Below are positions 194 to 42,900 of a stretch of DNA of 64,000 bases, piece after piece. Made by a program: the position numbers and the translations under genes. A model generated the notes under the pieces. That model saw nothing but the letters and a program-made list of their open reading frames with translations. It did no database searches and was not told the DNA's origin. The DNA lies in NCBI GenBank assembly GCA_964304625.1, contig OZ199839.1, forward strand, positions 5,584,111 through 5,648,110. The letters are read 5' to 3'. This DNA comes from Kudoa neothunni (lineage: Eukaryota; Animalia; Cnidaria). Every line of letters starts with the position of its first letter. Within the stretch, counting starts at the first letter, position 1.

Positions 194-2278
194 TGGAAGA
201 TAGGGAAAGAAGAGTTGATTCTGAAAAAAGAACTTTCAAAGAAGATTGGACAAATAAAAAATGATTTCTTGTCGAGAATTTTTTATAGAAGTCCGTGTTT
301 AATTTGTCAATAAAATATCACAGTTGAAAAAATTACTAATGTTAAAAGACACTACGGAACTCATCATAGTCGTTACAGCGGATTTACAGAACCAGAAAGG
401 AAAAACAAGAAATAGAGCGTTTGGAAAAAACCTTGACAAAACAATCATTATTTTTTACAAATTAAGTTGAAAATAATTATAAAATTACTTTGGCTAGTTA
501 TGAACTATCAAATTTTATTGCGAAAAGGATGAAACCTTTTACTGATGGGGAATTTTTCAAAGAAATGCTATTAAGTTGCTGTAAATAGCGTGACCTGAGA
601 AAAAAATCGTTTCCCGAAATCAATCTATTAGGAAGAATTGTAGCGAGATGTATCGAGGATATAACAGGAACTGTAAGAACTAACCTAATAAATGCTTTCG
701 AATGCCTGAATATTTTTCCATTTCTATCGACGAAACTACCGATATGATTGATACCGCACAACTTTCAGTGTTTGTGAGGGGTGGAACATCACGATTGGAA
801 GTTGTTGAAGAATTTGTGAAAATAATTCCAATGAAAAGCACTATAACAGGAAAAAATATATTCAATCGTATTATGAAATGGATGAACGAAATGAACCCTA
901 ACACCTCAAAATTAATTGAGGTTACAATGGATAGGAGCACCAGCAATAGTAGGTGAAGAGAATGGTTTTGTTGCTTTGCTGGATATTTATGTTGGTGATA
1001 ATACAAGTCTTATTAAACTACATTGTTTTCCACACCAAGACGCACTCTGCGAAAAGTCATTACCCTTTTAGAGAAGTTATGACGTCTGTTATAAAATCTG
1101 TAAATCTTATGTTATCCAAAGGCCTGAATCATCGTCAATTTAAAGAATTTTTGAATGACTTCGAAACTATTTACGGTGATCTGACACACTGTTCTAATAT
1201 TATATGGCTAAGTTGTGGAAACATGTTATAAAGAGTGTATGTTTTGAGAAACGAGATTTTCGATTTTCTAGCAGATAAATATCAAGACACCTCTTGATTT
1301 CAAGAGCCGCAGTGACTTGATTAATTGACATTTTTGGCAGATATTTCCAATCACATTAATAACTTAAATCTCGAGCTCCAAGGAAAAAACAAACTTGTGT
1401 CAGACATGTTATATCAAGTCACCTCCTTTGAAAGAAAACTTAAACTTGGGGAAAAAACAGCTTCTGAAGGGGGGTAATTATTCTCATTTTCCTAACCTAC
1501 AAAATCATAAAATCGATATACAAGATGATTTGTTTTCAGACGGTGTTACTGATTTAAAGGATGACTTTTCTTCTTGGTTTCATGACTTTCGAGACTACAA
1601 AAATAATTTTGAACATTTCAGTATCCCGTATGGAATCGACGTAGAAGAAATAGATGAAAGGTATCAATTAGTAGTAATTTACCTGCAATCCAATAAGGAT
1701 CTGGAGTCGATATTTTTGGGTGTGTCAACTATAAACATTTATAAACACAATCTATCACTGACTGGAAAATACAATAATTTATTAGAAATATCGAAAATAA
1801 TGATATCGATACTTGGGAGCACTTATGTATGCGAACAGCTATTCTCGAAGTTAAAAAATACCAAAAGTATGTGGCGGAGTAATTTACGTGATGACCATCT
1901 CGATAACAACTTGTTGCTTTCCACAACAAAGGTGGATATTTCCATCCCTGAGGTATCGAAGAAAACAAACGAATTTTCCATTAATTATTATACATCAATT
2001 TGACGAATAAATTTAGAAAATTAGTTTATTTTTCTCGCGTCCCACTGAAACGATATAATTTTAAATGTCGCATTGTGAATGTCTTAAGCCAGTATTCCAA
2101 TTGCATTGTAAAAAATTCATTTCGCCTAAATGATTTATACACATTTTGGTCCCGCCTTCTAGTTCAGCTTGATTATCCGGCCGGAAGACTATTCGGATTG
2201 CCCCTCTGCGCTAAATGGTCCAAAAAACGAATAATACTATTACTTCGGCCTCCTTAGCTGGAAAAAAGTTTGAGCCAA
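194..2278 (+). mobile_element. Degenerate hAT DNA transposon (Buster/SPIN/GTF2IRD2-like transposase pseudogene)
   Basis: ATG at 194 gives MEDRERRVDSEKRTFKEDWT. Fragments include FSISIDETTD..DTAQLSVFVRG, GLNHRQFKEFL, and the C-terminal dimerisation motif LGSTYVCEQLFSKLKNTKS..RSNLRDDHL. Many stops and frameshifts. GC-rich CGGCC subterminal sequence lies at ~2140-2278; no intact terminus seen. Confidence 0.9.
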
Positions 2279-5548: not shown

Positions 5549-8042
5549 TTAACCCTCTAACGGGCTTGGGGTCTTTTAGACCCCAAAACGATTTTAATTT
5601 GTCCATAGAATATTTTATAATTATCTGGGATACTTAAAATTTCGTCTATTCTCCTAAATTATTTTAATAAATAGATTTATAAAAATCTTTATGTGGAATA
5701 TTGATTATTTCTTATCGAACAAAATTTTTATCTTCCAACGGGCTTTGGGGTAAAAAAGACCCCAGATTTTATTTGATTTGACGTATGTAGAAAATTATTA
5801 TAAGATGATTTGGAAATTTAAAAAAAAATCTGCCTAATAAATACTGTCAAATTCAGCAATTATTAATCAATATAATCCGCCGTAATCCGATTAAGTATGT
5901 AATCGCAACATATCGTAACCATCGTTTATATGAATACCGCAAGGTCAATGTTTATTAGCTAAATACAAACAAAATTAACATATTACCTCCGTGTACTAGC
6001 AATAAATAATCCCCTACAAAATAAGCTATAGATAATTTAAGCCTTAGGACCGTATATGAGAGTTAACGCGAAATATACACCAATTTTATCGTTTGTTGCG
6101 CACATTGAGATAATCATGGCACCATCTGAGGATTTTAGCGATGAATATCAACCTTTAAGTAGCGACATTGATGAAACCGTTCTTGAATATTCCGAAGAAT
6201 CCGATGATACATCAGACTGCGAACATCCTGCGGATTCTACGACAAGCAAAAGCGGAATACTTTGGACATTGAATAAGCCACCTCCATCAAAAATGCTGAA
6301 GGAGAATATCATGAATCCTCGACCTGGGCCGACAGCTTATTGCATACAAAGAGTCAAAAACGTGTTGGACTGTTTTTTTATATTCTTCACTGATGAAATT
6401 TGCCAGGAAATAATAAAACAAACAAACGTTCACGGGAAATTACACTTTTCTGATTTATGGAATGATTTAGACAACGTTGAATTAAGAGGATTCTTCGGAA
6501 CACTAATTTTGATGGCTGTCTACAAAGACAGAGAGCAACCTCTTTTAGAAATGTTTAGTATAAAGGAAGGGAGAGAGATGTATCGCGAAATCTTTTCATT
6601 TAATCGTTTTCGCCAAATTCTACGATGTATTCATTTTGATAATCCAAGCACCAGATCTGAAAGAAGAGAATTGGATAAATTTTGTCCAATTCGCAACATA
6701 TGGAACATGTGGATCTAGACTCTACCTATATGTTTTTTCCCCGGTGAAAATGTTACCGTTGACGAGCAGTTAGTCTCGTTTAGAGGAAGATGCTCATTTA
6801 GACAATATATGCCGATGAAGCCGGCGAAATATGGCCTAAAGTTTTTCCTAGCTGTCGATCCAGTCCACAAATATGTTGTAAACATTTCTCCCTATCTAGG
6901 AAAGAACGGAACTCAAGCTAGCCAAAACTGTGGTGTTGGTGAGAATATTGTGCTTTCCCTTACAGCTCCCTTGTATAACTCAGGAAGAACTATAGTTGCA
7001 GATAATTTTTTCTCTTCCCTTAGACTAGCCGAGAAGCTGTTAGACAAACGTCTGACATATCTTGGAACAATTCGACACAATAAGAGAGATTTACCACCGT
7101 GTGTTCTTCCGTCTAGAAATCGTTCCTTATTCAGCACTATGTTTATATTTTTTGATAAATATATGATCACTTCATATGTCAACAAAAAAGAAGAGCAGTG
7201 ATTCTCCTATCCTCAGGAACAACCAATAACAACATAACCAACGATACACATAAACAAAAGCCTGAAACAACAGTGGATTATAATGGTTCCAAAGGAGGAG
7301 TAGATACTGTGGATCGGATGTTGGCTTCCGTTTCGGTCCGCAGATTTAATCGACGCTGGCCCATGGTGGTCTTTTATAATATGTTGGATTTGACTTTGAT
7401 AAATTCATTTTGTCTATATAAACACATATTTAACGATTCCACAAAATTGAGACGTGATTTTCTGAAAGAAATGGCTGGAGAGTTGTATAAACCTCTTTTG
7501 GAGAGAAATTCCCAAATGAAAAAATGTTCAAAAAGATCTCATCCAACTTCTATGGAAACATACAACTTTGCAGATTCAAATACTTCTAAACGAAGATGTG
7601 AACATTGTCCTCGTGAAAACGATAACAAAACCTCATCCAAATGCTCAAAATGTGGAAGTTTCTACTGTCGCGCCCATTCGTCAAATAAATCTCTAAATTG
7701 CTAGCTAATATAAACCAAATTTATTAGGGACCCTTGAAAATATTTTATCTTTTATTTTTTACTAAAATGTTATTTTTCATTATTTCAAATAAGACTAAAC
7801 ATATTATACGTTATAAAAACGATTTATCGCGATATCTGCTTAATCTTGCCGAAGAGGATTACTGAAGATTAATTATGAAGTAATTGATTATTTTCTCAGC
7901 GTTACTTAGGCAGAATTTTCCCATATTTCCCTCATAAGTTTATAATAATTTTCTGCATACATTAAATTAAAAAAAATCTGGGGTCTTTTTTACCCCAAAG
8001 CCCGTTGGAGGGTGGTCGTTTTTTCATCCGTTGGAGGGTTAA
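5549..8042 (+). mobile_element. Near full-length piggyBac transposon
   Basis: TTAA TSDs at 5549-5552 and 8039-8042. TIRs are CCCTCTAACGG / CCGTTGGAGGG. Subterminal inverted repeats at ~5733-5840 and ~7905-8013 contain GGGGT..ACCCC palindromes. Confidence 0.95.
6056..7704 (+). pseudogene. piggyBac (PGBD4-like) transposase with one premature TAG and one frameshift
   Basis: Acidic N-terminus; catalytic motifs TVDEQL (~6760), IVADNFF and KGGVDTVD; MPMKPAKYGLK; C-terminal Cys-rich domain CEHC...CSKC..FYCRAH. TAG at 6716-6718 and a shift in the A-run near 7185-7200. Confidence 0.93.
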
Positions 8043-8479: not shown

Positions 8480-10733
8480 TTAAACCCTCAGAGCATCCGA
8501 AAATCGACTTTACACATTCCTTCTTTGGGGGTCCAATGGACCTCATATTTGATTTAGCTTGAATTATGCAAAAAATAAAATAAATAATTTACTAAAATAC
8601 AAAAGGACATTATCAATAAAATATTGAATAATATAACAAATATCACTTCAACGATTGGTAACGATAAGTAATGAAGAGTTTACAACGTTAAAATAAGCAT
8701 AAAATTCAACGATTTTAACTACCTTTTGCATCTAATGTTGTGTTAATAAATAAAAATTTAATTCCTTATTAATAAAACAGTATTAAAAGTTTCCCTTACA
8801 ATTAATTTATAAAGAGTGGCGGCCAATAAAAACCGCAATATATAAAATTTTGAAATAGACAAAACATGAAATGTATATATTTTAGTTTTTCTTATTAGAA
8901 CATAACAAGCAAGTAATTTTTGAGTGGTTTTCACTGCACTTGGCCCACAAACACAACAAATAATACTCGTTTTTCTATCACGCGATCTTGAACAAAAACG
9001 ACATCTATTCTTGCGACGAGGAAATTTTTGGTTGCAAGTAGAACTTTGATTAACACGATGTGTGTCTCTCTGAATATAATCCTTCACCAAACTATCCGCA
9101 AGTCCTTCTAGAAACATAACCCTTAAACAATCATGGCCGCAGAAAATAGTCTTATAAAGACAAAACACATTTATCAAACTAGGATAAACCATGTTGAAAA
9201 ATATTGCCGGCGGACGTCGATTGGTACACCTTTTTACACTTGTTATTGCAATAATATGTTCAACCATTTCCTCCCCTCCTTTATAAAGGTTATATTCCAA
9301 GGTAACCATAGGTTTTTTTCGTTCACTATCTTTAACGTCTGTATTGAAACAGGAGGATGTACGCACTCGTTTTCGATTAAACAAAAACGTGTACTGAAAA
9401 CCTCTTGCTTTGAATTCTTTTTAAGATAATCCGGAATATCTCATTTATTATTACGGATTGTTCCAGTTATTGGCATTCCCCGTGTTAGGAGTTTTTGGGA
9501 AAGGAGAACAGAGGTAAAGAAATTATCACAGATGATATTTCTCCTACTTTCCTTTAATTCGGAAACAAGATTTAGAACAATGTTTTCTACAACATTTTTT
9601 GACCTTTCATTGTTATTTTTACCTAAATATACCGAAATATTGTGAGTGTATTTGGTCTCGGGATCGGTAAGGAGAAAAAACATTATTCCATACACTTCTA
9701 GCTTTGACGGCATATATTGTTTAAAGGGACATTTTCCGCTAGAAGCAACTAGTTTCTCGTCCGTTGTCAACTTCTCCTAGGGGATAACAAGTTTGGGAAG
9801 AATATCTTTCCAATCATCAAAAACATCACGAATGGGGCTGAATTTATCCAGGATTCTTCGAGTCTCTCTCGTTTCAAAATCATTAAAACGAATAGCTCTT
9901 GAAATTTGAATTAACCTTTCCAACACTCCATAGTAGTTCGAGTGATTCTAATTTGGCTGTAAAAATTGACATATACACAAGAATTCCTAAATATGCCAAT
10001 AACTCTTGGTTTGTTAAATCCTTCCAGGAATGTTGATAATGAAAATTGCCGAACTTATTAGTATTCGAAATTACAATTGAGAAAAAAGCCTCATCGAAAA
10101 ATATGAGGAATGTATCAACCAACGAGGTAATTCTGCTTGACGCATAGGCGGTTATACCTTAAGATTTTCGAATAATATTATCATTAGTGCTTTTAGTTAT
10201 TTGAGGTTTATCAGGATACCAAATTACACACCTCTTAACCTCGTATATATTCCGATAATATTTATTATCGCCAGAAATATCAGAATTTTGTGAATAATCA
10301 AATTATTCAAAGTTATCATAAACTTCACTCACATCCGACTCAAATTCATTCGAAATATCACGCTCAGAACCACTCGTGCAACATTTTTCTTCTCGGTGAT
10401 GATCGTTACTTATCACCCATGGTCTTTTGAATTTATCTCTGTTTCCTCCCGATAAATTTTTGTTTAATCCTCAGAATTGTTTTAAATTATTTTTATACGT
10501 ATTTTAGAAGAATAAACATGGGGTCTATTGGACTCTCAAAGAAGGAATGTGTAAGTTATTTGATTATTTTCTGAATTAAAAGTACAAATTATAATTTTTT
10601 GTAATATTTTAATTTAATATAATTTTTAATAGAATAAATGAGATAACGTTTATTGAGGCGTTACAAGGTTCTCTAAAATGGATTGAAACATCCCTTGGGG
10701 TCCAATGGACTCCAAAGACGCTCGAAAGGTTAA
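8480..10733 (-). mobile_element. Second, more decayed piggyBac transposon (different family)
   Basis: TTAA at 8480-8483 and 10730-10733. Ends are (A)CCCTCAGAGCATC and CCTTTCGAGCGTC. GGGGTCCAATGGACC-type repeats occur at ~8527, ~10520 and ~10697. Fragmented transposase: TTDEKLV..GKCPFKQYMPSK, IICDNFFTS, YNLYKGGEEM, RCRFCSRSRDRKT. Confidence 0.92.
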
Positions 10734-17160: not shown

Positions 17161-19080
17161 ATGATATTAAAGGGATCGGCGACACTCGAAGCTTGTAAGT
17201 TTTAACTGGCTCTGATGGTTGATTTTGAACTTATAGGTTTTTGCATTGAGTTAAATAAATAATTCTGAATACGTTTTAGAAAGTAAGAAGGAAGCTTATT
17301 CTCTCGAATTCGTCGAAACTATTCCATCCGGTTATGAATTTCCTCCCCAGGTGACTACGTATCCTTCTATAGGAAGTCGTACTTTGGAAATGGTAAAATC
17401 ATGCGAAAAATCGATCAAGGCCATAAGCTTTTACTACGAGTTGAGGAAAAAGTCGACTCAACATCAACATCAACAGCAACAGCAACAACAAGAACATCAA
17501 CAGCAACAGCAACAACAAGAACATCAACAACAGCAACAGCAACAACAAGAACATCAACAGCAACAACATCAACAGCAACAACAAGAACATCAACATCAAC
17601 AGCAACAACAAGAACATCAACATCAACAGCAACAACAAGAACATCAACATCAACAGCAACAACAAGAACATCAACATCAACAGCAACAACAAGAACATCA
17701 ACATCAACAACAGCAACAACAATGCGTCTGCAAGGAAAGTGCTGAGACCGTAATCTATGGGAACGAAATTTATGATGAACTGGTTCAAGCGGCTAAAAGG
17801 GGTCATTCTCTCTTACTAACGTTGCTAAAGTTATGACAAACATACAATAGGAGTCAAGATACAGTTGATAGCCGACGTTCCTCAAGGATGGAGGGATAAT
17901 CAAGATGTTCTGGACTTGAAGTCTCAATTCCCCGAGAACGTCGACTTCAAATTCATCGATATGTCTCATAAAACTCCCGGTTTTGTAGGCGGAATATGCC
18001 ATTCAAAAATGTGGATATTTGACGACAGTAAATTTTTCGTGGGAAGTGCAAATATTGACTGGCGCGCTTATAATGAGGTTTGTATTTGGCCTTATAAAAC
18101 TAGAGACAATGAATGTTACATCAATTATTGGTTGAAGATTTGTGCTTGATTTTAGTTTCATCTCTCTAAGTTGTTCTAAACAAAATTCATTTTTATGTTT
18201 TAGAACGTCAACACAGGATTTGTTGGAGAGAATCGCTCTGAATTGCTATCAAAATTAAACAGCATCTTTGACGAATTGTGGAATATAAACTCAGCACCCA
18301 CGTCGATAGATCAATCTGTGGAATGTGCTTCTCAAGAAGCTACTCACTCAGTAAAACAAATTGGAGACCTTCCAATTAAGGTCTCAACCAGTCCAAACAT
18401 TATCACTCAAGCCATCCAAAGTATTGATGACAAAATAGCCCTGCTAGACGTGATAGATACTGCTCAGAAGTCTCTATACATCGGTTCATACAAATATACA
18501 CACTATGGATACTTCACCACTCCGAAAAGGTATCATTTTTCAGTTATTGTAATAATATCTAATTAAGCATTGACTATACTGTCGAAAATGCAATTGCAAA
18601 TGCCGCAGCTTTGCGACAAGTTAAGGTGTTTATCATTGTTGATAAAAAATGTGTTAAAGATGAACATGTCGCTGATTCGCTCTTGAGACTGATGAAGAAT
18701 GAAGGCGTCGTTGTCGTACCTATTTGAAATTTTGTAATATTTTCATTGGTGTATTGGTTATGTAGAAAGTTTTCCATGGAAATACAGATGATGATCCAAA
18801 TCCCGAGCCATATACTAAAATATGGCACCTCAAATCAGCTTCGTCTGAAGCAAAAGTTTGGAACAGCACTAACAACATCGATCCTAGTTATTTTGTGTCC
18901 ACGGCTGGAGTCGGCATCAACCTGGATGCTACTCATTCAGCCTATTCCAAGCAAATTATGCCGCTAGTTGATGCTGTTAATGGCCACTTTATGAGGTATT
19001 GGAACTCGAAGTACACCACCATACTGAAGGATAAACACCTGGTCGAGTTACATCCTCATCTAATTTTGTCCGAAGTTTAG
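17161..19080 (+). CDS. Phospholipase D3/D4-family (5'-3' exonuclease-like) protein, multi-exon, with a Gln-rich insertion; 5' end uncertain
   Basis: FVETIP; SFYYEL; first catalytic motif GGICHSKMWIFD..FFVGSANIDWRA (HxKxxxxD); second motif PYTKIWHLKSASSE...YFVSTAGV (HxKxxxxE); C-terminal FMRYWNSKY. Introns at ~17802-17850, 18078-18203, ~18530-18568 and ~18716-18765. One apparent 1-nt deletion near 18770. Confidence 0.88.
17460..17721 (+). repeat. Coding CAA/CAG/CAT/GAA minisatellite (QQQEHQHQQ units)
   Basis: Near-perfect 27-30 nt units (caagaacatcaacatcaacagcaacaa), in frame with PLD sequence on both sides. Confidence 0.95.
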
Positions 19081-22299: not shown

Positions 22300-25200
22300 A
22301 AATCTATAACAGTTTTTTTCTAAAAAAACATTTCCTTAATAATTCAACTTTTGTGGGAAAATCTTTAATCCTCATAATTCACAAGTAGTGTCTTTGGAAT
22401 TTTTTCTGTAAAAAACGAGTCCTATCACCACAAATAGTGAAGCCACGATTGGTATCATCTCATACAATCTAAAAGAGGCTATAAAACATCGTGTTACTTT
22501 CATAATTACATGTGAGTGCCAAATGTCCTTAAAAACGTTAAAATTTGAAAATTCCGACAAAAATTACGAATGACTGTTCTTTGCAACTTCAAATTTGTCT
22601 TGTCCCTTGTTATCTATTATTATGTTTATCTATATTTAATTTTTTGGATAAAAATTATACTAAATAAAATGTTACAAAATTTTTAGACATATTATTTACC
22701 CTTCTACAGAATATTTTATTTTTTGTGTTATCTCATCTATTTCAATATTGGTATACTCGCTCCCAACATTTCCCTCTTCTATTAATATATTAATTAATTA
22801 ATTAATTAATTAAGTTTTTGGATGTAATTTACTAAAACATTATTATAATAAAACAATATAATTAAAACTCTATTACCTCATTCTCTGAACCATTTTTGAG
22901 TCTTTATTATAAATATTATTCGAATAGACAAATTATAAAATTGTCAAAAAATTCATTTACATGGAATAATATGCCCTTTATAGAGTGAATAATCCTTCAC
23001 TTTCAGCTTCAATATGTAATCTTTTTCTCTTGACAACTTATTCACGTTGATACTACAGTTATTAGCTGAGCATTCTGCATCCTCATTACATCATGTAACA
23101 GTTGGTCCTGCCGCATTTTTATCTGTTTTTTCCTGCAATTAAAACGGACATCTTGAATTATCAGCTTTTCCGACCCAAGTCACTTCAACTTTCAAATCGC
23201 TATCTCCATTTAACGTAGGTGTGATAGTAACATCGGTATTTGCTAAAAAGTTTTATTAATAATAAGACTTTTTATCTAAAAAACTCGTTTGAACTTGGTA
23301 TTTCTTCTCTGCTTTTCCATCGGATGGTTCAACAAACACGTCGTATGTTTCTCCTAATGTCAAATTTATAATTTTGAACTTATTGTCACATTTGTGCTCG
23401 CACGCTCCAATTTCATCGCAAGTAGCCATATATTTTGGATCGGATTCGCCATCCTTTTTATGGTAAATTCTGCATATTGGCAATGAATCATCTGCTGAAA
23501 ATGGTGTTATGGTAGCGTTGCCACCTGTTATGATGGGAGTTAAATCATTTCCGTTTATTGCTGTTCCTCCAGCTAAATTTAATTTCGAAATATGTTGATT
23601 AAATTTACAAAAACTTGTTCGGAATATCATTTTCTTTGTATATTGATTAATTCCAAGATTATTTATCGGTACAGAAACGACGTAATTTATACCAGCTTCC
23701 AAATTAGTAATGGTGTGTGGATCTTTACAGTTGTTATTACATTCACTACTACCATTGCATCGAGCGTTTTGTTCAGTGGAAAATGTGTTTGCTCTTTATA
23801 CTTTAATAGTACATTGGGGATCTGTGCCTTCCTTAATTTCTGTATAAACGACAAGTCCATAGACAGTGACTTCCGAATTCGTAATATCTCTTAAACCGAT
23901 ACCACTAACACCTCCTATAAAACATTATTTATAAAGTCTAATCAAAATTTACTTTTAAAATATTGTTCGAATCCAATAGCATCAAATCTTCGTTTTACTA
24001 TAACACCAACTTTGTCTTTTTCTCCTATCAAATTGATAATGCCGTCTTGACAAAGTTGGAAACATTCTTTTTCCACATCATTACATCCATTCAGAATTTT
24101 ATTTTGATTAACGCCAGAACTGTCGACTTCAAATACCTTGATATAACAAATCTCATCGATATATGGACCAGGAGAGAATTTTATTTGTATTTTTGCATCA
24201 CTATCAACTTTTGAAATGGAATAAATCATCTCAGATCTTAGTGGTGTCTTATCATATAAATAACTATTATTCAAAAAATAGAATAATCCAGGCTACAACA
24301 GTGTTGAATTAATTTTGTAATAATCCATGGATCTATCAATCGAAAATATAGCAGATTTGCTTTGTATAGTGTCGGAATAAGTTTCTACTGCCAACTCATT
24401 TTTAAGATTATCATTATGTGTGTCAGTTTTTCCGTCATACTCAACATTCCACTCTGAAACAGAATTTGTTTTGTAGGAAAATCTAATTTTACCATCATCA
24501 TGAGATATTGAATAAGTGTTTTTTTGATTCAGATCTAAAACAGGATTATTTTAGTTGAATACATCTTATATTAAAGATTATTTCTAGGTCAATTATTGTT
24601 AACGTATACATAAATCAAATAAATCAAGAGGTGATATAATAATTTTTTATTACTCATTATTATTGGGAAAACTTGAACTTTTTTACAAGCTTTTTCTTCA
24701 TCATTATTTTTATCATAACAAACAGATAAATATCGATCTAATTTTGAATTTATGGATCCGACTTCAAATTCATTTTGACTGCAGTCCGTTAAGCATTCAT
24801 TTTGATTAACCATTTTGCAACTTGTTGGTTTGTTGAATTCAGGGGTTGCCGTAAAACCCGATATTTTTATGACACATTTATAACTCTCGGGAAATTTTGA
24901 CAGTGTAACAGAAAACCTCTCAGTATCTTTGGCATCAGAAGGAATAAGTTTTTGTTCAAGTTTTCCACTCCGAGAAAAAGCTATAAAAATATGTTGAACG
25001 AAAGAAATTAAATACGTTACCTGGTATTGATAGTTTAACAAGTTTCAAATTGGGTGCATATATCAACAATCTGTAGTTATACTTATTATCATATATTTTA
25101 TCATCAAACTTGATATCATTGCATTTTTTAATAATTTCGTTGTCAGTGCAACTGATGCAGGACTTTATGATTTTAGTAGGTGAAGCTACATATGATTATA

Positions 25201-28200
25201 TAAAAACATTTCTGTATCATTACTTTAATTCGGTTCATGCTTATACAACTGATAATAGCAGTCTGTACTGCTAGCATCAATGGAAGATGGCTGTGGTTGT
25301 ATTATAAGAATATTCTTCTTGGATTTATCCGAAACTTCAAATTGAATAGATTGACCACCTATTATTTATTATTTAACACAAAATTTATTTTTACCTGTCG
25401 TTTTATTAGAAACAATTTTAATATCATAGGATCCACTAGGAACGATTTTGAGGTCATAGGTCGTGTCTGAGTAAAGCCCAACGATATTAAAAGCTGAGTT
25501 GCATGGTTTTACACATAACTCATTTTCTGAACAAATAGCAGGGTAATATAATTTTTCAGCTTCCCTGACGTATATAGTGCAGGTTTTTGTTCCTGAAAAT
25601 GTACTTTGAGCGATTGTAAATCCATTATTAGTAGCTGTAACTGAACCATCTTGAAGGGAAAGTTCATTATTTTGATCTAAAAAAAATATTATCAACAAAA
25701 TTTGATTATATAAAATACTCGCTTTGTGGTAAAAATATTTTCTGGGTGAATAATCTGGTATATTTGCTATAGTAACCATAACATCGTTAGGTAAATGATT
25801 TGGATCAGGCGTTATTTCTATTTCTCTGAATTCGCAAGTTGGTTGAGCACTCACAGATTTCCTTCCATTTCCAAAAACCAATGGAGCGTATGTATTCCAC
25901 GATTTCAATGTACATTGTACACCAGATTTAGTAGTAACAGCCCCATCGTCTTCATTTTTGTTACTACCAATAAGGTTGATCCTAATTTTGTTTTCTGGGG
26001 ATTTAACAGGAACATCGCTTCCTTGCTTCACTAAAAATTACGATATATTTATTAAATATTTTAAATATTACGTAGGTATATATTATTTTGATAACCAATC
26101 GAAGGTTTCATCCCTAGCTTTAGGACCCGTATTTTCACTGCCTGTACTGTTTCTGGTATACTTCCAAATTTATAACTGCTACACATACTATAAAAACAGT
26201 TGTTCTTATTCTCGCACACGTTTGAAAAAAAATTGTTTGAAGAGGATGATGTGGCATCAATCCATTCAAATGTGCACATTTCAGATGGCTCGTCATTAAC
26301 CAGTTGGACTGTTAATTCCTTCTTTTCATCATTGTTGTATAATTCGTAGTAAAATCTACTGAATATTGGTGCGTGGTTTTTAACAAACGTATTGTCGTAA
26401 AAATAATGAAAATCAAAATATTCTGGACAACTTATATAATAATCTTTAACCAGTTCGTCGAATGGAATAGAGTAACTCTTAAACGTACTTGGCGCACCAC
26501 CACATGCTTCTGGTGTCGGAGTTACCTCATTTCCGTCCGTATATGCTTTACAAGAAGACGGAAATTCATTCAAAGATAATTTAATCTTATCTGCATCCAA
26601 TTCAGCCGTGTGCGGTATTTCTTCGTACAAATCTAAAACAAAGTTAAACTTATCATTAAATTATTTAATACCCATATAGTAGGAATAAACTTTTCCAACC
26701 TTCAATTCCTTTTTTTCTCTCTGGCTTCCTGGTTTCGATGTTTGTTTTTCGCTTTGCTGGCCTCCAACTGGCCAATTTAGAGTTAGGATCAACATTGAAA
26801 AAATGTTTTCAATAATGTCGATTATTTCTGAAATTACCGCATCGACAACTTTATAATCTGGATAAGTGACGGAAATATACTTATATTTGTTTTGAATATC
26901 AATATTAATATCAAATTCTGTTGAAAGTTGGTTGCATTGTTTTGGAAACGGTTCACTGTCACCTCCCAAATCATCATAAGCAGTTAAGCCATCATTGGAT
27001 TTTTTGACAGTACATTGTTTATCATTTTTTCCATTAAGTTCATCGTCAAATTTAACCTTATATTTATTTTTTGATTTGTCGTAGTATAAAATCATACCCT
27101 GAGTATTTTTTTCGATATCAACTATAAAAATAAAGAGAATATCGCGAAATAAATAAATACATTCAAATTCTGTTTCCTTTGGTTTGTCTTTATCTTTATT
27201 CACAATAACAACGATATATTTGACGTCGGCATCAAGTTTAGCCCATGAAAATTCTAATTTGGTAGTCCCAGAATCAGTATTAATAGCGGGATTACAATCG
27301 CTATTCAAACAATCTATTAATGTTTGCTTTGATATTTCTTCCAACAGAATATAGCCCCATGATTTTCCGAAAGCTTCACTTCCACTTGACGCTTTTGTCA
27401 CTGTTATTGTAGTTTTCTTATCTGATTCATATTTGGTAGTGCCTAATGTAAATTCGACTCCACCAGCTATTTCTAACTGATTATTACGTAATTATTTAAA
27501 ATATTACTCGCTTTTATAGCTGTTTCAGTACACGTGTATCCTTTAGAACAAATGGTTATTTTGTAGTTGGTTTCTAGGTCAAGGTTAATAATTTCAAATC
27601 TCTCATTATAAGCTCCAGAACAAAATTTTTTATCACTGTTGTCCCTACATGTCGCAGGAAATTTTGAAGTCTCACTTTCTGTAGTTGAATAATACAGTTC
27701 ACATTTTTTGTCCTTAATATCACCACTGGAGAATAAACTATTAAGATTTAGAGTTAGTTTAGTATTATCGTCTGATCCAGCAGCCGGAGTGAGACTACTT
27801 GTCCCCGTTAATTCATCTCCTATTTAAATTATTAGAATATTCGAAAATTTGATATTATTTTTAGTTTTGAAATAAATATAGCAATGATAATATTTAACTT
27901 TTGGTGAATCTACGGTTGTATGCCCAGTTATTTTAATCTTTAAAATATATTCTGTTAGCGGCTCAAGCGAACTTATATTTATTGTTCCGAATGTCTTGCA
28001 CTTTTTAGTGCGTGTAAGATCTTTGCCATTACTTTCAACTCCAGGATATTTTTCAATTAATTTAAATTCTGTTATTTTTGCTCCATTTCCTGCAACACTT
28101 CTATTCTCATTTAAATTAGTAAATTAACAGTAGCATCGGTCTTTTCAGTTGAAGTGATAGTTGCTTGATTAGCAGAATTAACTGTGGAATAGATTAAAAT

Positions 28201-29246
28201 AAAATGAATTAGTTAGAACTTACATGTTACGATTTGAATGAACTCTTTCGAAATAGTCGTTTCATACGGTTTCACAAGTACTTGGGCATAATCCAAGGTT
28301 GAATCGTGAAATAAAGTTGCTTTGTAGCAAGGCTGGAGACATGGCCCAGCTTTATTCATAACTGAGCAATTTGAGGAAAAGTGAACTTCATTAATATCTT
28401 TTATTCCAAAGTAACATAACTGAGATGGTTTTGGATTTTGGAGTGTAATTATATAATAGTTATCACTTTTGGAGCCAGATGCTATAAACCAATCTACGTC
28501 GGGTTTTTGTGGATTTAATAATATTTCTGGTGACCGATCGAGGAATTCAACAACATAATTAGGTTTATATGATTTAGTATAAAGTGTAACAGATTCTTCT
28601 GTATAAAAACCCTTATCCGGCGAATGTTTAGATTTTTCGACAGAGTTCCCTTTAACACTCAGTCCTCCATTGACTTGAGTTTTTACAGTGACATAAAATA
28701 TATTATTCTCCTTCGTGGCCATAATCACGCTTTTTAGATAAAGATCTATTACATTATATTTTAAAAATATAACATTCTAACCTCATACCTTTGATCGTGA
28801 AAGTCTTTTTAATAGGACATCTTTTGACATTATTAACATCATTTCCTTGACACCACTTTAAAAATTTAACACCTTTCAATTCTTGGCCGCTAGGCTTTAA
28901 TTCTAATCTTTTGCAGTCAAAAATGCACATCTTTGCAATTGTGTCCATGTTCGCACGAGTTATATCACCGCATGTAGAGATGGTGCCGACGGGTGCATTT
29001 GTATGACCATAATATTGAAGTGCACATTTCTTGTAACTATTTTCAATATCATACCCTGAAAGTGAGATAATATATGTGTTTTGCTGGGTTGAATATCTCG
29101 ATATCATAATATTATTATCGATATTAATTGCAAGAACATGCCTTTCACATACTACAGATAATGATAAAAATTATTAATTAAAGCTTAAATTACAAATTAA
29201 AAATAGAAGAAATATTGATGAGACAAATCTAAGATTTATCTCCATA
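22300..29246 (-). CDS. Uncharacterised large type I membrane protein with tandem Cys-rich FN3-like modules (~2000 aa, many exons)
   Basis: ATG at 29246 gives the signal peptide MEINLRFVSSIFLLFLILCERHVLA across a ~40-nt intron. Successive exons of ~300 nt are joined mainly by phase-1 introns. FN3-type motifs include ISSLEPLTEYILKI, IINLDLETNYKI, IVGLYSDTTYDLKI, ITNLEAGINYVVSV and IINLTLGETYDVFV. A TM helix IPIVASLFVVIGLVFY followed by RK lies at ~22400-22460. The 3' end is approximate. Confidence 0.8.
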
Positions 29247-29899
29247 ATTATCATTTTCCGTATCGCGAATTAACGAAGAATATGTGTTTTATATATTACT
29301 TTAAATAGATTAATACATTGGATTAGATATTTATTGGTTCCTATTCAATTCTTTAAACTGAAACTCGGAAGTTTCGTGAAAATAATAACCATTCATAAAT
29401 TAACTTCTTTCATGAATGGATATTGATTTTATTATCTCTCTCCGTTATTATTTTAAATTTTCTTTTTTATTATTACAAAAAAATTCTTAAAAAAATCGGA
29501 GTTAATTTCTAGTAATCGTGAAGGAAATAATTTTTATTTTTAGTTAATACATCAAAACAATAATATTGCTAACATATATATATATATATATATATATAAT
29601 GTAACATCAAATTTCGACCATGGTTCATTCTAGAAACGTGTTTGTACTCCGAATAATTTTTCCAATGCAAAATAATTAAAATTGGTATAATCTGTTATCG
29701 CGCATCAAAAAAATTATTTTTATTCTTATTTATGTAAGCAGAAATTATATCTTTAATTATAAAACAGAATAAAAAATGAATATATATATATTTAGCTATT
29801 ATGCGTTAAATTCAACGGGCCTCTGTGGAACAAAGGAAAAAAGGTTACTCTTTCGATAAGAGGTGCATGATTTGATTGAGAGATGTTTCAAAAATATTT

Positions 29900-32581: not shown

Positions 32582-35500
32582 ATGTGCAGTAGTTTTGGAG
32601 ATATTTATTCCCTGAGATATAACCAGTACCTAATTAAAATTTGGTCTATTTGCCACAATGAATATTTTCGTTTCAACAAAAAAAATAAACGAGTTACTGA
32701 TTCTAAATTATTTCAGAGGTTAACTAAAATTTGTTTGCATTTTAATCGATCTCACACATGCGCAATCATTAACATTAAAAAATGACTGGAAGAACATTAC
32801 TTTCTACTATAGGCGCAATGAAAAAATGTGAATTTGTCAGTAAAATTATTAATCTCAAAAAAAAGTCAAATGGAAGTTTCAAGTTAATTTTGGATATAAA
32901 TAAAAGTGGAATAAATCGAAAAAAAAGTTATCTGGACAACTTTCATAGAATTTTAGCTGAAACATTATCTTTATATCATCAGCAAGTGAGTTGTTTGATT
33001 GATTTTGAAACAAAGATGGAACTGACCACACAAACTGAGTTGTTTTCTGCTGTGAATGAGGATTGTGTTGGAAGTGGGATGAAAGCACTTCGATATAGAG
33101 TGGAGAACGATTGTTTAACGCATAAAAAAATCGCTGTCGGTGGTACATTTGATCGGTTTCATTACGGTCATTTGTTGTTGCTGACCACGGCGTGTGTATT
33201 ATGTGAGGACACTGTTCACATTGGGATCACATCGGACCAATACATTAAAGACAAATATCTGAGCGAGATAATCGAGCCTTACAACGTGAGGAAACAGAAA
33301 GTGGAAGATTTTGTCAGCCGATTTCCGGGTAGTTGCAAGTTGCATGCGTGTTATATTCTAATAACTCGACGTTAAGTGAACTACATAATACAACCATTGA
33401 GTGATTCTGCTGGTGTTGCTGGCAGTTGTTCTGAATTAACAGCGTTGGTGTTGACCTCTGAAACCGAACACAGTATCGAACTGATAGAATCTTTGCGAAA
33501 ATCCAACAATCTACCTCCTCTTTCTTATTACATTATTGACAATATTATTGCACCCAACAAATCATTGACTGAAATAAGTCAGATGGACAAGCTAAGCAGT
33601 TCATTGTTGAGATTTAACGATTTGGGGAAATTAATCAAACCACCCACCATACCTCGTACATATGATGGAATGGTGTTGAAGGATGGGGACATCAAAAATG
33701 GTGTCCCTTATTTGATTGGTGTTACTGGATGTATAGCCAGTGGGAAATCGAGTGTTTGTAAGCGGTTTCAACGAACAGCCCAAAATTTGGGTGGATGGTC
33801 AATTTCTGTTATCGATTGCGATATGCTCGCCCACAAATCCTATCAATTTGGCAAACCATGTTACTACGAGTTGTTAGAGTGTTTCTCGGATGATGCCAAT
33901 GTAATTGAGTGTTACAGTTGGCATTATTTCAACAACTCTTTAGAATATTATCAACCCACAAACAAGAGAGATTGATCGCCCTGCGTTGGGTCGAATTATT
34001 TTCAACGATAGTGATAAACGTGAATTGTTAAATAAAATCGTGTGGAAATATGTTTTGCAAATGATGTTGGAGGAGATCCAAACTTGTGGATCACAAATTT
34101 GTTTAGTGGAGGCAGCATTTATGTTGGAGGCAGGAAGAGAATCATTTTTCAACGAGGTGAGTATATTTTGTCTACTACTGATAATTAATGCTTCCAGTTT
34201 TAATGATTTAAATTTGAAACCTTCGTTTGATACGAGAATTGATCCGTTAATTAATGATTAGCGATAAACTAGAATTTAATAAGATTTTTACTGTTAAATG
34301 TTTTTGTTTATTGTCATTTTTGTTAATTACATTTTATAATTTTTAATGTTAATGAGTTTGTACAGCTAATTCATTAAAAATACTGTTGTTTAATGTGTCG
34401 TTAAAATTCGGAATAATTAATATTAATTTTTGGATTAATTAATGCAACTAAAAACTACATTCTTTAAGACTTTTGATCCATTTTAAATTTTATGGATTAA
34501 TATATCCTCGCAAGCGTATTAGTTTTTACTTTTGTTATGGTTTCTGCGAGTCATCATCTTCGAATGAAATAATCTCACCAAATTATGCTTACTTTATTTA
34601 AGTAAATTGTTGTTGTAAATTTTCTTAATTAAAAATGTTGTGTTATATTTCAATGTAATGATTTTTATTATTATGGGACATAATTGCAAGAATTTAACAT
34701 CTGCGCGCGATTAATTTAATTAACTAAATTAATTACTTAAAATAATTTTATGTTATAGTTAAATATATATTAATAAGAGTATCGAATTAAATTATAGTAA
34801 AATTTTTAACTATAAATCATTCAAATGCATCCTATCTTCTGTTTATTTAATAGTTATTTTAAATAAACAGAAGAAAAATACACTGCTATTGTTGATATGG
34901 GTAAATTTAATTACTTTATTTTTAATTCAAAACTCTAATCATTTTTTGGTTGATTTTGTCCATACGGTCAGAAATATTTATTTATTTATTTGACCATAAG
35001 GTTAACAATATTATTCAAAATAAAAAATCCAGAAGTTTCAATAATTTTTTAACATGTTTTCGTCATTTGCAATTTCAGGAGGGGAAATTAAATTATGAGG
35101 ACGAATCTTCGTACATCGTTCGAAAGCAGATCGAGAAGTTAGCAAAAATTTTGAATTTCTATCCATAACAAATATTTAAAGTCTCATCCGATGTCCCTTC
35201 TCTATCGTTACAATTACTCCCCTTTCACAGAGATTTTTCTGGAATGAGTCCTCTGATTGGTAATCATTAAAATTTGAGAATTCTCTATTAATTTTTCGAC
35301 ACCGTCGAACATATAGTTGAAATTCTTTTCGAGAATAAGCGTATATTACTGAAAATAAATAAAAACTAGATTTTATTAGACACGCAGTGCCGCCCCAGGC
35401 CTGACTATTCTGACTATTCTATTCTGACTATTCTATTCTGACTATTCTGAATATTTTGACTACTCTGACTACTGTTAATTTATTAATTTTCGTTAATCCA

Positions 35501-39900: not shown

Positions 39901-42900
39901 TTTACCTGATTTAATGAATATAGAAATATTTATATTTTTGATTTACACGTTTATAACTGGATTTTATTATTGGAAAAACATTAGACGCTGCCTACAACAA
40001 AATACTTGGAGTTAAATTAAAAAAAGAAGATTATATCTTTACATAGGGTTAATTTTTATTTTATTTAATAAATCGCAAAATATGTAATAAATAAAACTCA
40101 GCAAAATTTTAATTACTCAATATTCATTATGTATTTTATTCTAATATTGGTATTAGAGACTATTTTTGAATGCTATGGTCCTTTATCGTAACATACAATC
40201 GCCATAGAACTTTCGGATAAAAAAGTTTACCCGCCTTTTTATATATCGATTTTCTAATAATCGCTACATTGATGTAATATCAAAAAATTTTAAATCCCTA
40301 TATTATAAACAATTTGTCACAACATTCTTTTTATGTATACATATATATTACATAGATGTAGAAATTTATAATATAATTCTACTTTTGAGCTCAATGACCC
40401 CTCACTTATAATTTTGTTTTTTATGATAAAAATACTCCATAAGCTTATTATTATTATTATTATTATTATGTTCACATTAGAAATTTTGTGTTAAATTTTA
40501 TATTTAAATTATATAATTGTTAAAATGTTGATTCCACATATGAATAAATATCACGAAAGCTTAAAATGGGTCATGTGATTTTTACAACTTTTATCTTCAC
40601 ATTTACATAAATTGATATTTAATATTAATCATATGTCGGTCTCTAATAGAAGACATTTAAAGAATATTTTCCCTCATTGTATCTTAAATTATTTTTATCT
40701 TTGGTTTTCCATAGAAAAAAAATACGTTGCATAATTGACTTCCTTCGTTTATTGTTTATTTAATGAATTTTACCAATATTGTTTCTATGAAGGAAAATTA
40801 AATAGTTCGTCAAATTTTTGTGTCGATTTGTTTTGTAGTCTAAACTGTTAAAAACTTGGATTAAATATTTTTTTTATTTAGTAAAGTAACTAATCTTTTT
40901 CTCTTTTTTTAATTAAAATATATTTTTTACAAAATTTTTTCTAAATAATTATAAATTCATAATAATAGTGATTTTTTTGACCCCTTGAGTTGATGCGGTT
41001 AATTGTTGTTGTTGTTGTTGTTTGTTGTTGTTGTTGTTGCGGGTTAATGTTTAATTCAATTTTTATTTGCTTAGTGGCAAAATAAAAAGCTACAGATTTG
41101 ACGACAAAACGCAAAAATCTCCTATTCACATACAAATGACTCCTCAAACCGAGCAGCAAATCTTTCAAATATTAATTCTACCCATATGGGTAACAATTAT
41201 AAGTTAACTCCTTCAATAACATTGAATTTTTAAAGGCGCCGTAAAGATTCTTTGTTGGTGCCCCGATTTCACTATTCTTGCCTCGTGTTGGGAGTCGGGG
41301 CATGTAGCCCTCTGGACTACTTTTGGAAGTTTAATTAATTTTGTTACTTTGGGGTATTTTAAAACAGGAACGATTTATTCAAATATTTTATTATTCTCTA
41401 GGAACACCTTCCTTGGCAACAATCCATTTACAATTAACACCATGGTTTGTATTATTGGTTTGTAGTTTTAAATTCTATCCGACTGCTTAGGATTGGGGGT
41501 ATCGACAGTCATTATCTCACAATACATGTTATCGTTGATAACGTTCACTCCACTCAATCTAAAAACCAACACTTTTATGAACTTTCCTTTGTGAAATTTG
41601 ATCAAACAGTTGCCGATTTGGGTTTTCCTTCATGGTTTTAACTATGTTTTGGTGAGCCAAATGAAAAAAAATGTCACACTATCAAGGAAAATATCAGAAA
41701 AAGCACAATATTTCTCATAACAGTTGGTTTGTGCTTAATTTGCCCGAGTTCTATCAACTACACGACATCCACATAAAAACTGTAGCGGTTGACGTAAAAT
41801 CGTTGAATGTAGCAGTGGCCTGTGATAGAGGGTATCTAGTTTACAATTGGGACACCCAAAAATGGCTTAATTCTACTCTAAATCGACAACCCTCAGAAAC
41901 TCTGGTCAATAATTCGTGTGTGTGTTGGTGGCAAGGAGTTTTATTGTTGTCGGTTCTCTACAGTGACACTCCAAACAAATCCCATCTGTTATGTCATATC
42001 ATCAACTCGAAGACCAATGACAATATAGAAATCGTTAAAGAATTTGATTGTGTGAGCGTTTTTCAACAGATCTATCAGAACAACAAATTGATAATTTTTG
42101 GAATGGATTCCAAAGTGCGTATTTTTGATTTGGAAATGATATACCGATAATTCGGATCCTTTGTTGAAAAAAAATGTTTCTCTTGTGGAAGAGAAAGTTA
42201 TTTCACTTGTTGAGATCGTTCCTCATCCTCTCACTCTCATTGATCTGCAATTATATTCGCAAAACTTATATAACACCGCCTCACCTGTAAATAACCCCCC
42301 CACATGAGGTTAGTGGTAATTTGTCCAACGAGCAATTTAAATCCACCATATCTTTGAATTCAGCGTCGTCATCTAGATTTTCTCATTATCTTCTGTTGAA
42401 TATAAGTGGAAATTTGCACAGTGTGTGCGTTAGCGACGACAACTTCATTGATTTGGAACGTTGCCAAATTATAAAGAACTTTGTCGAGTCATTCTGGATA
42501 TTTGAGAATTTTAGATGGTACTTTTGTGGATGGAAAGGAATCCAAGTAGCTCAGTAGATGGTGAAACGATTATTCATACTTTTGATTCTTAGTTTTATGT
42601 TCCTAAAAATGCCGATATTTTGGTGGCTGACGATAAAACAACTTCACCAAATGAATTATCTATTCATGTAAATATCCCTAACACATTCCTATATCCAATA
42701 AGTATGTGTTTTTTCGTGCGAGAATTTGTAACTAAAGAAATTTTTGATGGTTGATAATATGTAGAATTCAACACTAATACTATGTTGATTCATGCCATTG
42801 AAGCGATATCGATGGCGACAACTGTCTGCCAATATACAAACTAAATAATACGGTACATATATACATTTATTTTTAGACTCGTAACTATTTTCTTTCTTTT

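What the first reader, a model, noticed from the sequence alone, without database searches (positions are those of the whole stretch)
22300..29246. Unrecognised giant surface protein built from a repeated four-Cys FN3-like module
Seen in sequence: a signal peptide, roughly 15 modules of ~90-110 aa, one TM helix and a short tail. At least seven modules share C-x(~14-20)-C-x(5-14)-C-x(3-4)-C. Examples are TCTIYVREAEKLYYPAICSENELCVKPC, ICRIYHKKDGESDPKYMATCDEIGACEHKC, KCVIKISGFTATPEFNKPTSCKMVNQNECLTDC, ICYIKVFEV...GCNDVEKECFQLC and LCYFGIKDINEVHFSSNCSVMNKAGPCLQPC. Several of these are followed by the FN3 tyrosine-corner motif (L-x-P/x-x-T-x-Y-x-I/V). Established: canonical FN3 domains usually lack such a Cys set. 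Inference: this is a lineage-specific beta-sandwich with a disulfide-stapled variable loop, arrayed as an adhesin, surface antigen or receptor. The modules are very divergent, so this is an old or fast-evolving expansion and a candidate host-interaction system.
Basis: partly seen in the sequence, partly recalled or inferred. Interest (0 to 1): 0.8.

Follow-up and report, generated by a model that had tools for sequence, protein, structure and literature searches.

The report
Dead copy, Kudoa FN3 surface family
This is a broken copy of a roughly 65-member gene family of the fish parasite Kudoa neothunni; intact members encode about 2,000-residue membrane proteins built from some 18 cysteine-bearing fibronectin-III-like domains, and their membrane anchor appears to need two nested introns of a kind I found described only in fungi.

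Summary
The locus (minus strand, 29254-22372) is one 22-exon gene: N-terminal hydrophobic leader, about 18 modules (mostly one per phase-1 exon), one TM helix, 12-residue tail. The four-Cys motif occurs 9-10 times per protein (shuffles: 0.3-0.4). Two modelled exons fold as FN3 sandwiches (best Z 9.7). (1) This copy is a pseudogene: five stops, one frameshift, one lost donor; short-read contigs agree with the assembly. (2) It belongs to a family of about 65 colinear genes in Kudoa neothunni (Myxozoa); 6 of 21 copies examined are intact (1,954-2,024 aa), dN/dS 0.3-0.5, with gene-conversion tracts. The Cys loop is not positively selected. (3) Two juxtamembrane introns have [D1,2] stwintron layout in 42/42 cases and in a distant relative; one-step splicing loses the TM helix. 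Only 3 of 1.84 billion representative proteins carry the module. It is not a receptor phosphatase, cytokine receptor, VSP or Alr. No RNA evidence was available, so splicing and function are inferred. This scan had already noted the family and the nested introns on other DNA of this genome.

The parts
22372..29254 (-). Whole 22-exon gene model (pseudogene copy of the family)
   Evidence: colinear with 20 paralogues
29194..29254 (-). Exon 1: start codon and hydrophobic leader (probable signal peptide, continues into exon 2)
   Evidence: SignalP not run
28789..29151 (-). Exon 2: N-terminal module with extra Cys, related to exon 13
   Evidence: 65 distinct loci in the genome
28224..28745 (-). Exon 3: probably two modules, the second with four Cys
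27859..28181 (-). Exon 4: two-Cys module with tyrosine-corner motif; one-base deletion near 28120; following donor lost at 27858
   Evidence: short-read contigs match the assembly across 27948-28411
27508..27819 (-). Exon 5: four/six-Cys FN3-like module (one conserved Cys lost in this copy)
27161..27466 (-). Exon 6: two-Cys module
26672..27121 (-). Exon 7: two-Cys module plus hypervariable low-complexity insert (exon 414-636 nt among copies)
26072..26632 (-). Exon 8: probably two modules, most conserved exon, aromatic-rich middle
25719..26030 (-). Exon 9: two-Cys module
25395..25676 (-). Exon 10: four-Cys FN3-like module
25021..25358 (-). Exons 11+12 (25358-25224, 25185-25021): one four-Cys module split by an intron; stop at 25227
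24654..24980 (-). Exon 13: six-Cys module
23953..24534 (-). Exon 14: tandem pair of beta-sandwiches, second with four Cys; stop at 24295
23615..23914 (-). Exon 15: four-Cys FN3-like module; stop at 23798
   Evidence: short-read contigs match across 23364-24278
23285..23572 (-). Exon 16: four-Cys FN3-like module (the exon modelled, from paralogue L024)
22961..23242 (-). Exon 17: membrane-proximal four-Cys module; stops at 23141 and 23093
22878..22901 (-). Exon 18: 24-nt micro-exon
22779..22877 (-). Nested twin intron 1 ([D1,2] layout): external G at 22877, internal intron 22876-22832, rest of external intron 22831-22779
22701..22778 (-). Exon 19: stalk exon
22614..22700 (-). Nested twin intron 2 ([D1,2] layout): external G at 22700, internal intron 22699-22660, rest of external intron 22659-22614
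22510..22613 (-). Exons 20 (22613-22568) and 21 (22527-22510, 18 nt): juxtamembrane stalk
22372..22468 (-). Exon 22: TM helix, about 12-residue tail, stop. Most paralogues end Y-[DE]-L; this copy ends C-E-L

Best explanation
The locus is a recently disabled member of a Kudoa-lineage multigene family (about 65 loci, about 1% of the genome) of very large type I membrane glycoproteins. Shown: gene structure, copy number, pseudogene state, FN3 fold of two exons, purifying but loose selection, gene conversion among tandem copies. Inferred: intact members are secreted into the membrane as long rods of about 18 FN3-type domains whose four Cys form disulfides around the C-C'-E edge; having no catalytic or ITAM-type tail, they act as non-enzymatic adhesion or coat proteins at the parasite-host or parasite cell-cell interface, tethered through a short Y-[DE]-L tail. 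The repertoire turns over by birth-and-death and patchwise conversion, not by a shown switching system. The TM exon stays in frame only if two [D1,2] nested introns are each removed in two ordered steps.
For: Genome identity: three chromosomes plus an 18,219-bp remainder equal to the K. neothunni mitochondrial contig in PMC12239612. 65 exon-2 loci and 56 TM-exon hits; 20 of 20 fetched loci colinear (L029 lacks its first exons). Six intact copies of 1,954-2,024 aa with 13-20 N-glycosylation sequons. Exon 16 model pLDDT 87.5, top structural matches almost all FN3, Z 8.3-9.7, rmsd 2.0-3.3; exon 14 matches FN3 tandem pairs, E 2e-4. dN/dS 0.29-0.54 between intact copies against a median of 0.058 for Kudoa orthologues in PMC12239612 (different method). 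Identical runs of 112-335 nt among tandem copies only 80-86% alike, where about 32-43 are expected. Nested layout in 42/42 introns; single-step splicing ends the frame before the TM in all six intact copies; same layout and same frame dependence in contig L037, 25-50% protein identity.
Against: No transcript or protein evidence: the only RNA run laid gave zero reads and no RNA holder is on record. Surface location, disulfide pairing, ligand and stage are untested. Only 3 of about 18 modules were modelled. 15 of 21 copies look disrupted, although some single frameshifts may be assembly errors at the low read coverage reported for this genome. The 20 copies examined are the nearest relatives of a dead copy, not a random sample.
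Confidence: 0.7

Rival explanations
1. Variant surface antigen system: one or a few members are expressed at a time and switched to evade fish antibodies, with pseudogenes such as this one serving as donors of sequence.
For: Large paralogue family, many pseudogenes, conversion tracts; antigenic variation is reported for some myxozoans with the mechanism unknown (bioRxiv 10.64898/2026.02.11.705288).
Against: No segment has dN/dS above 1; conversion tracts cluster at the membrane-proximal end, which homogenises rather than diversifies; the window copy shows no long tract shared with any examined paralogue (longest 60 nt); loci are dispersed on all three chromosomes.
Confidence: 0.15
2. Regulated membrane/secreted switch: one-step excision of either twin intron gives a frameshift and a soluble ectodomain, so the nested introns set the ratio of anchored to shed protein (decoy or matrix).
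For: Single-step excision ends the frame 16-75 residues short of full length, before the TM helix and after all modules; both twin introns are kept in a distant relative; one-step excision is documented in fungi (PMC9024468).
Against: In fungi one-step excision is rare mis-splicing usually cleared by nonsense-mediated decay; the frameshifted tails are not conserved in length or sequence among copies; twin introns may simply persist because short-intron genomes cannot lose them without a frameshift.
Confidence: 0.12
3. Self/non-self or cell-in-cell recognition receptors analogous to Hydractinia Alr proteins, binding homophilically between parasite cells.
For: Cnidarian host lineage; one domain per exon, extra Cys in an FN3-like fold, single TM, many pseudogenes, as in the Alr family (PMC9546547).
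Against: Alr FN3-like domains keep the strand-B Trp, lack the EF Leu and tyrosine corner, and have three Cys (B, BC loop, E); the Kudoa module is the reverse, with four Cys from strand C onward. No ITAM/ITIM room in a 12-residue tail; genes not in one complex.
Confidence: 0.08
4. Truncated descendant of an R3-type receptor tyrosine phosphatase or other known FN3-array receptor, now a catalytically empty family.
For: About 18 FN3 domains plus one TM resembles R3 receptor phosphatase ectodomains (own knowledge); weak matches to CD148/CD45 and Dep-1 FN3 domains.
Against: All matches to known proteins rest on the generic E-F motif, at most 21 bits per domain against 52-87 for true relatives; stop codon 12 residues after the TM in all copies; the four phosphatase-domain hits of the genome are not next to these genes.
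Confidence: 0.1

Closest known systems
Fibronectin type III domain (Pfam PF00041) and FN3-array membrane proteins (R3 receptor phosphatases, DCC/neogenin, Dscam, gp130)
   Same: Seven-stranded sandwich (Z up to 9.7, rmsd 2.0), EF-loop Leu and tyrosine corner, one domain per phase-1 exon, type I membrane layout
   Different: Four near-invariant Cys, no strand-B Trp; no member reaches the Pfam cut-off; no Ig domains detected, no cytoplasmic enzyme; about 65 whole-gene paralogues
Hydractinia Alr family (PMC9546547)
   Same: Cnidarian multigene family of single-pass proteins, one domain per exon, Cys-stabilised FN3-like fold, genes plus pseudogenes
   Different: Alr has 1-3 Ig domains and one FN3-like domain without tyrosine corner, three Cys at other positions, often ITAM/ITIM tails, clustered in one complex
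Taeniid EG95-type oncosphere antigens (PMC2671473)
   Same: Parasite surface family built on FN3, proposed role in host invasion
   Different: EG95 is a small GPI-anchored protein with one FN3 domain and positively selected sites; no sequence relation found
Variant-specific surface proteins of Giardia and Sphaerospora molnari (bioRxiv 10.64898/2026.02.11.705288)
   Same: Signal peptide, Cys-containing ectodomain, one TM, short conserved tail, multigene family in a myxozoan
   Different: Here Cys 3.1-3.4% and one CXXC; VSPs need at least 5% Cys and six CXC/CXXC motifs; different fold
Fungal [D1,2] stwintrons (PMC9024468, PMC12403724)
   Same: Internal intron between G1 and T2 of the external donor; one-step excision gives a +1 frameshift; both halves are of normal intron length for the genome
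   Different: Here in an animal, two in a row, directly upstream of the TM exons; not confirmed by RNA. The 12 papers that use the term are almost all fungal and I found none reporting an animal case

Membership tests
FN3 domain | Seven-stranded C2-set/FN3 beta-sandwich | tested here: met
   Exon 16 model pLDDT 87.5; VIA Z 9.7, rmsd 2.0, 84 aligned to collagen XX FN3; exon 14 two sandwiches, weaker, Z up to 7.6
FN3 domain | EF-loop Leu and F-strand tyrosine corner | tested here: met
   Leu 99%, Tyr 100% of 79 modules from five exons; absent from modules of exons 3, 8, 13, 14
FN3 domain | Strand-B Trp, strand-A Pro, first strand-C Tyr | tested here: not met
   65 of 79 modules have no Trp at all; an invariant Cys stands at the start of strand C (hallmark list from PMC9546547)
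FN3 domain | Pfam PF00041 gathering score | tested here: not met
   20 of 79 modules hit fn3 at E<=0.1, best E 2.3e-4; window exon 13.1 bits against cut-off 25
Receptor protein tyrosine phosphatase (R3) | Cytoplasmic PTP domain with HCxxGxxR | tested here: not met
   12-residue tail, motif absent; PTP hits elsewhere in the genome
Type I cytokine receptor | WSxWS motif and CxW four-Cys pattern | tested here: not met
   Zero WSxWS and zero CxW in six intact copies
Usherin | Laminin N-terminal, EGF-Lam and laminin G domains ahead of the FN3 array | tested here: not met
   No such Pfam hit in ten exon-level scans covering most of the ectodomain
Variant-specific surface protein (VSP) | At least 5% Cys and at least six CXC/CXXC motifs | tested here: not met
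   3.1-3.4% Cys, one CXXC (criteria)
Hydractinia Alr | V-set/I-set Ig domains plus one FN3-like ECS lacking the tyrosine corner, six invariant Cys across Ig and ECS | tested here: not met
   Tyrosine corner present, Cys positions differ; direct sequence comparison not run
[D1,2] stwintron | G|GT...AG|T layout with two standard-length introns | tested here: met
   42 of 42; halves 38-54 nt, most ordinary introns 36-45 nt; also in L037
[D1,2] stwintron | Reading frame kept only by exact two-step removal | tested here: met
   Six intact copies and L037 reach the TM helix only with nested excision
[D1,2] stwintron | Splicing intermediate and final junction seen in RNA | not testable with these tools
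   No RNA run holds the locus
Antigenic-variation system | Mutually exclusive, switching expression | not testable with these tools
   No expression data

The most novel reading that the evidence does not exclude
Kudoa carries a previously undescribed surface-protein repertoire built on its own four-Cys FN3 variant, and two conserved [D1,2] nested introns, the first in an animal gene, act as a regulated switch between membrane-anchored and secreted forms used at the host interface.
Probability: 0.15. Interest if true: 0.85.

Novelty: new variant of a known kind. Interest (0 to 1): 0.58.

Why it matters
Myxozoans are thought of as reduced animals, yet this one devotes about 1% of its 40-Mb genome to one family of roughly 2,000-residue surface proteins for which I found no published description. 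It gives concrete candidates for the unknown molecules of host attachment and immune interplay in Kudoa, a genus that matters to fisheries. The conserved nested introns would extend [D1,2] stwintrons beyond fungi and are testable with one RT-PCR. The specific copy flagged is dead, so work should use the intact paralogues.

Tried and rejected
Word-based protein search with exon 15-16 and with the module alignment: nothing. Pfam on ten exon-level pieces: nothing above cut-off. ESM Atlas features for exon 8: best 0.80, below meaning. Full HMMER search of 1.84 billion proteins: 1,491 hits, but of the best 150 only three carry the module; the rest score through summed generic E-F motifs. Assembly error as the cause of the breaks: rejected for those covered by listed long contigs with zero differences (28120, 27858, 25227, 23798); no alternative base was reported at 23141 or 23093; at 24294 one contig shows another base with two more differences close by, which I read as a paralogue. 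Several separate genes: rejected, since exon order and phase are colinear in all copies with one leader and one TM. Hidden micro-exon instead of nested introns: no conserved donor at the needed phase after the internal AG. The control for the nested pattern (0 of 399 ordinary introns) is weak because most are too short to hold it. 7tm_2 search to check earlier notes on adhesion GPCRs with similar modules: no hit and no control rang, so uninformative. Joined spliced models were never sent to a search or folding tool; all searches were exon by exon by reference, and joined models were used only inside scripts for counting. The window copy was read with X at stops and not repaired.
Full report
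Source. The window is G000:C2:5584111-5648110 of a 40,260,978-bp genome in four contigs. The three large contigs measure 17,154,348, 12,040,071 and 11,048,340 bp, leaving 18,219 bp. PMC12239612 reports for Kudoa neothunni a 40.2-Mb assembly, three chromosomes, N50 12.0 Mb, GC 30.41% and an 18,219-bp mitochondrial contig. The match in numbers identifies the organism as this myxozoan parasite of tuna (inference, strong). Neighbouring genes are ordinary: PLD-like, CoA synthase, RIC1, inositol monophosphatase family, and hAT and IS4-type transposase remnants.

Observation. The quoted Cys segments are present in minus-strand frames. I fetched the 20 nearest paralogues, aligned their DNA with the window copy and read off donors and acceptors conserved across copies. 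This gives 22 exons from 29254 to 22372, with most introns 36-45 nt. Exons 2-17 are symmetric phase-1 exons; most are 280-360 nt and hold one module, exons 3, 8 and 14 are double length, and exons 11+12 share one module, about 18 modules in all. The four-Cys motif occurs 9 times in the window copy and 9-10 times in intact copies, against 0.33-0.40 in shuffles. There is one TM-grade hydrophobic segment at the end and a weaker leader at the start.

Fold. An alignment of 79 modules from exons 5, 10, 15, 16 and 17 has four Cys conserved at 97-100%, Leu at 99% and Tyr at 100%. AlphaFold2 on it gave pLDDT 87.5 and an all-beta domain. The 50 best structural matches are almost all FN3 domains, best Z 9.7, rmsd 2.0; Foldseek and the Atlas agree. 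Exon 14 modelled as two sandwiches matching FN3 tandem pairs. The first Cys begins strand C and the other three lie between strands C and E; I had no coordinates, so the pairing is not shown. Of the six FN3 hallmark residues listed in PMC9546547, the EF Leu and tyrosine corner are kept, a strand-C Tyr is partly kept (61%), and the strand-B Trp is lost. No module reaches Pfam's fn3 cut-off. It works like an FN3 array and is structurally FN3, but it is a distinct sequence variant.

This copy is a pseudogene. It has stops at 25227, 24295, 23798, 23141 and 23093, a one-base deletion in exon 4 near 28120, a lost donor at 27858, two lost conserved Cys and a changed tail motif. Short-read contigs from the same sample match the assembly with zero differences over long stretches that include 28120, 27858, 25227 and 23798. 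Its private changes still show dN/dS of about 0.36, like intact copies, so inactivation is recent relative to its branch. All six members of its subclade are disrupted.

Family. Exon 2 hits 65 distinct loci, the TM exon 56, on all three chromosomes, with tandem clusters; these are lower bounds. All 20 fetched loci are colinear with the window gene (L029 lacks its first exons). Six are fully open, 1,954-2,024 aa, with 13-20 N-glycosylation sequons and a tail ending Y-[DE]-L; several others differ from open by one frameshift that could be an assembly error. dN/dS between intact copies is 0.29-0.54, far above the 0.058 median for Kudoa orthologues (different method) but below 1. The loop between Cys2 and Cys4 has 0.54, the rest 0.48; exon 7, with a low-complexity insert of variable length, has 0.81. 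Tandem copies on chromosome 1 share identical runs of 112-335 nt against an 80-86% background, mostly at the membrane-proximal end, which indicates gene conversion. Different modules of one protein are only 11-28% identical, so the array predates the gene expansion.

Outside this genome. Word searches found nothing. HMMER over 1.84 billion representatives returned generic FN3 arrays plus three true relatives scoring 52-87 bits in one domain, against at most 21 for the rest of the best 150. Two lie on short contigs of metagenome assembly ERZ28624939 (40-70% identity, exons 4-6 and 9-14 in order); one lies on a 3.1-kb contig from run SRR33849685 (about 25-50% identity) carrying exons 10-22 in the same order. 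The source organisms are not named; the intron style suggests other myxozoans (inference). A paper search for Myxozoa with fibronectin type III found no description, and the K. neothunni genome paper does not mention fibronectin.

Nested introns. The introns after exons 18 and 19 are twice normal length. In all 21 copies each begins GGT and has an internal AG directly followed by T, dividing it into two halves of 38-54 nt (42 of 42). Spliced once from the visible donor, the upstream exon ends in phase 2 and the downstream exon needs phase 1, and the frame ends before the TM helix in all six intact copies. If the internal intron is removed first, the leftover G joins the T to form a new donor and the frame runs through the TM to the conserved tail. 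The distant contig L037 has both structures and the same dependence. This is the [D1,2] stwintron layout of fungi, where one-step excision gives a +1 frameshift and is rare (PMC9024468). I saw this before consulting earlier notes; the scan had recorded it on another copy. It is not confirmed by RNA.

How it most likely works. Intact members are long, glycosylated, disulfide-reinforced FN3 rods anchored by one helix; at about 3.5 nm per FN3 domain (own knowledge) 18 domains would reach roughly 60 nm. With a 12-residue tail and no enzyme, WSxWS, ITAM or consistent RGD motif, they are best read as adhesion or coat proteins; the Y-[DE]-L end resembles a class II PDZ ligand (own knowledge, untested; L037 ends D-E-I). 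The repertoire turns over by duplication, conversion and loss, and this locus is one of the losses. Antigen switching, a splicing-controlled secreted form, and Alr-like recognition are rivals that the data neither show nor exclude.

Verdict. Real feature, correct fold call, but a dead copy of a large family that I found undescribed in papers. New variant of a known kind (FN3-array surface protein). Interest 0.58, carried by the family size in a reduced animal genome and the conserved nested introns, and limited by the absence of expression or functional data. Method limits: searches and folds were run exon by exon by reference; the joined model was not searched.

Noticed in passing
window 17351-18566 (+): PLD-family gene (PLDc motif at 17865-18146) with a long Q/H/E repeat tract at about 17460-17720; also noted earlier by the scan (s1-696087).
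   Followed up: no
window 32782-34261 (+): Bifunctional CoA synthase-like gene (cytidylyltransferase-like plus dephospho-CoA kinase pieces).
   Followed up: partly
window 1395-2003, 6056-7704, 8758-9770, 51661-52050: hAT and IS4/piggyBac-type transposase remnants (the last one by eye only, no Pfam hit).
   Followed up: partly
window 41671-42150 and 54759-55163: RIC1 second beta-propeller exon and inositol monophosphatase family exon.
   Followed up: no
window 60447-60915: Very AT-rich tandem repeat giving spurious Y/L/I-rich ORFs in three frames.
   Followed up: no
G000 C2:7.99-8.17 Mb, C3:10.77-10.97 Mb, C1:16.86-16.90 Mb, C2:8.6-8.7 Mb: A second, distant group of loci (24-30% identity) carrying tandem four-Cys-like modules; could not be fetched. 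Earlier scan notes describe further FN3-like families and adhesion GPCRs in this genome.
   Followed up: no
window 26330-26410 (exon 8): Aromatic-rich stretch nearly invariant across copies; reads from many paralogues pile up here (depth 57-72). Candidate conserved binding or folding site.
   Followed up: no
L018, L028, L029 (G000 C3:9.01-9.07 Mb): Three tandem copies sharing identical runs of 1.1-1.3 kb: very recent duplication or conversion; all three disrupted.
   Followed up: partly
L037:1127-1170: The distant relative also looks disabled: a short tandem duplication and a stop in its exon 14 equivalent, and a stop in the exon 11 equivalent.
   Followed up: partly
window 24535-24653 (intron 13) and 22902-22960 (intron 17): Two further longer introns (46-120 and 57-64 nt among copies) without the nested signature.
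   Followed up: partly
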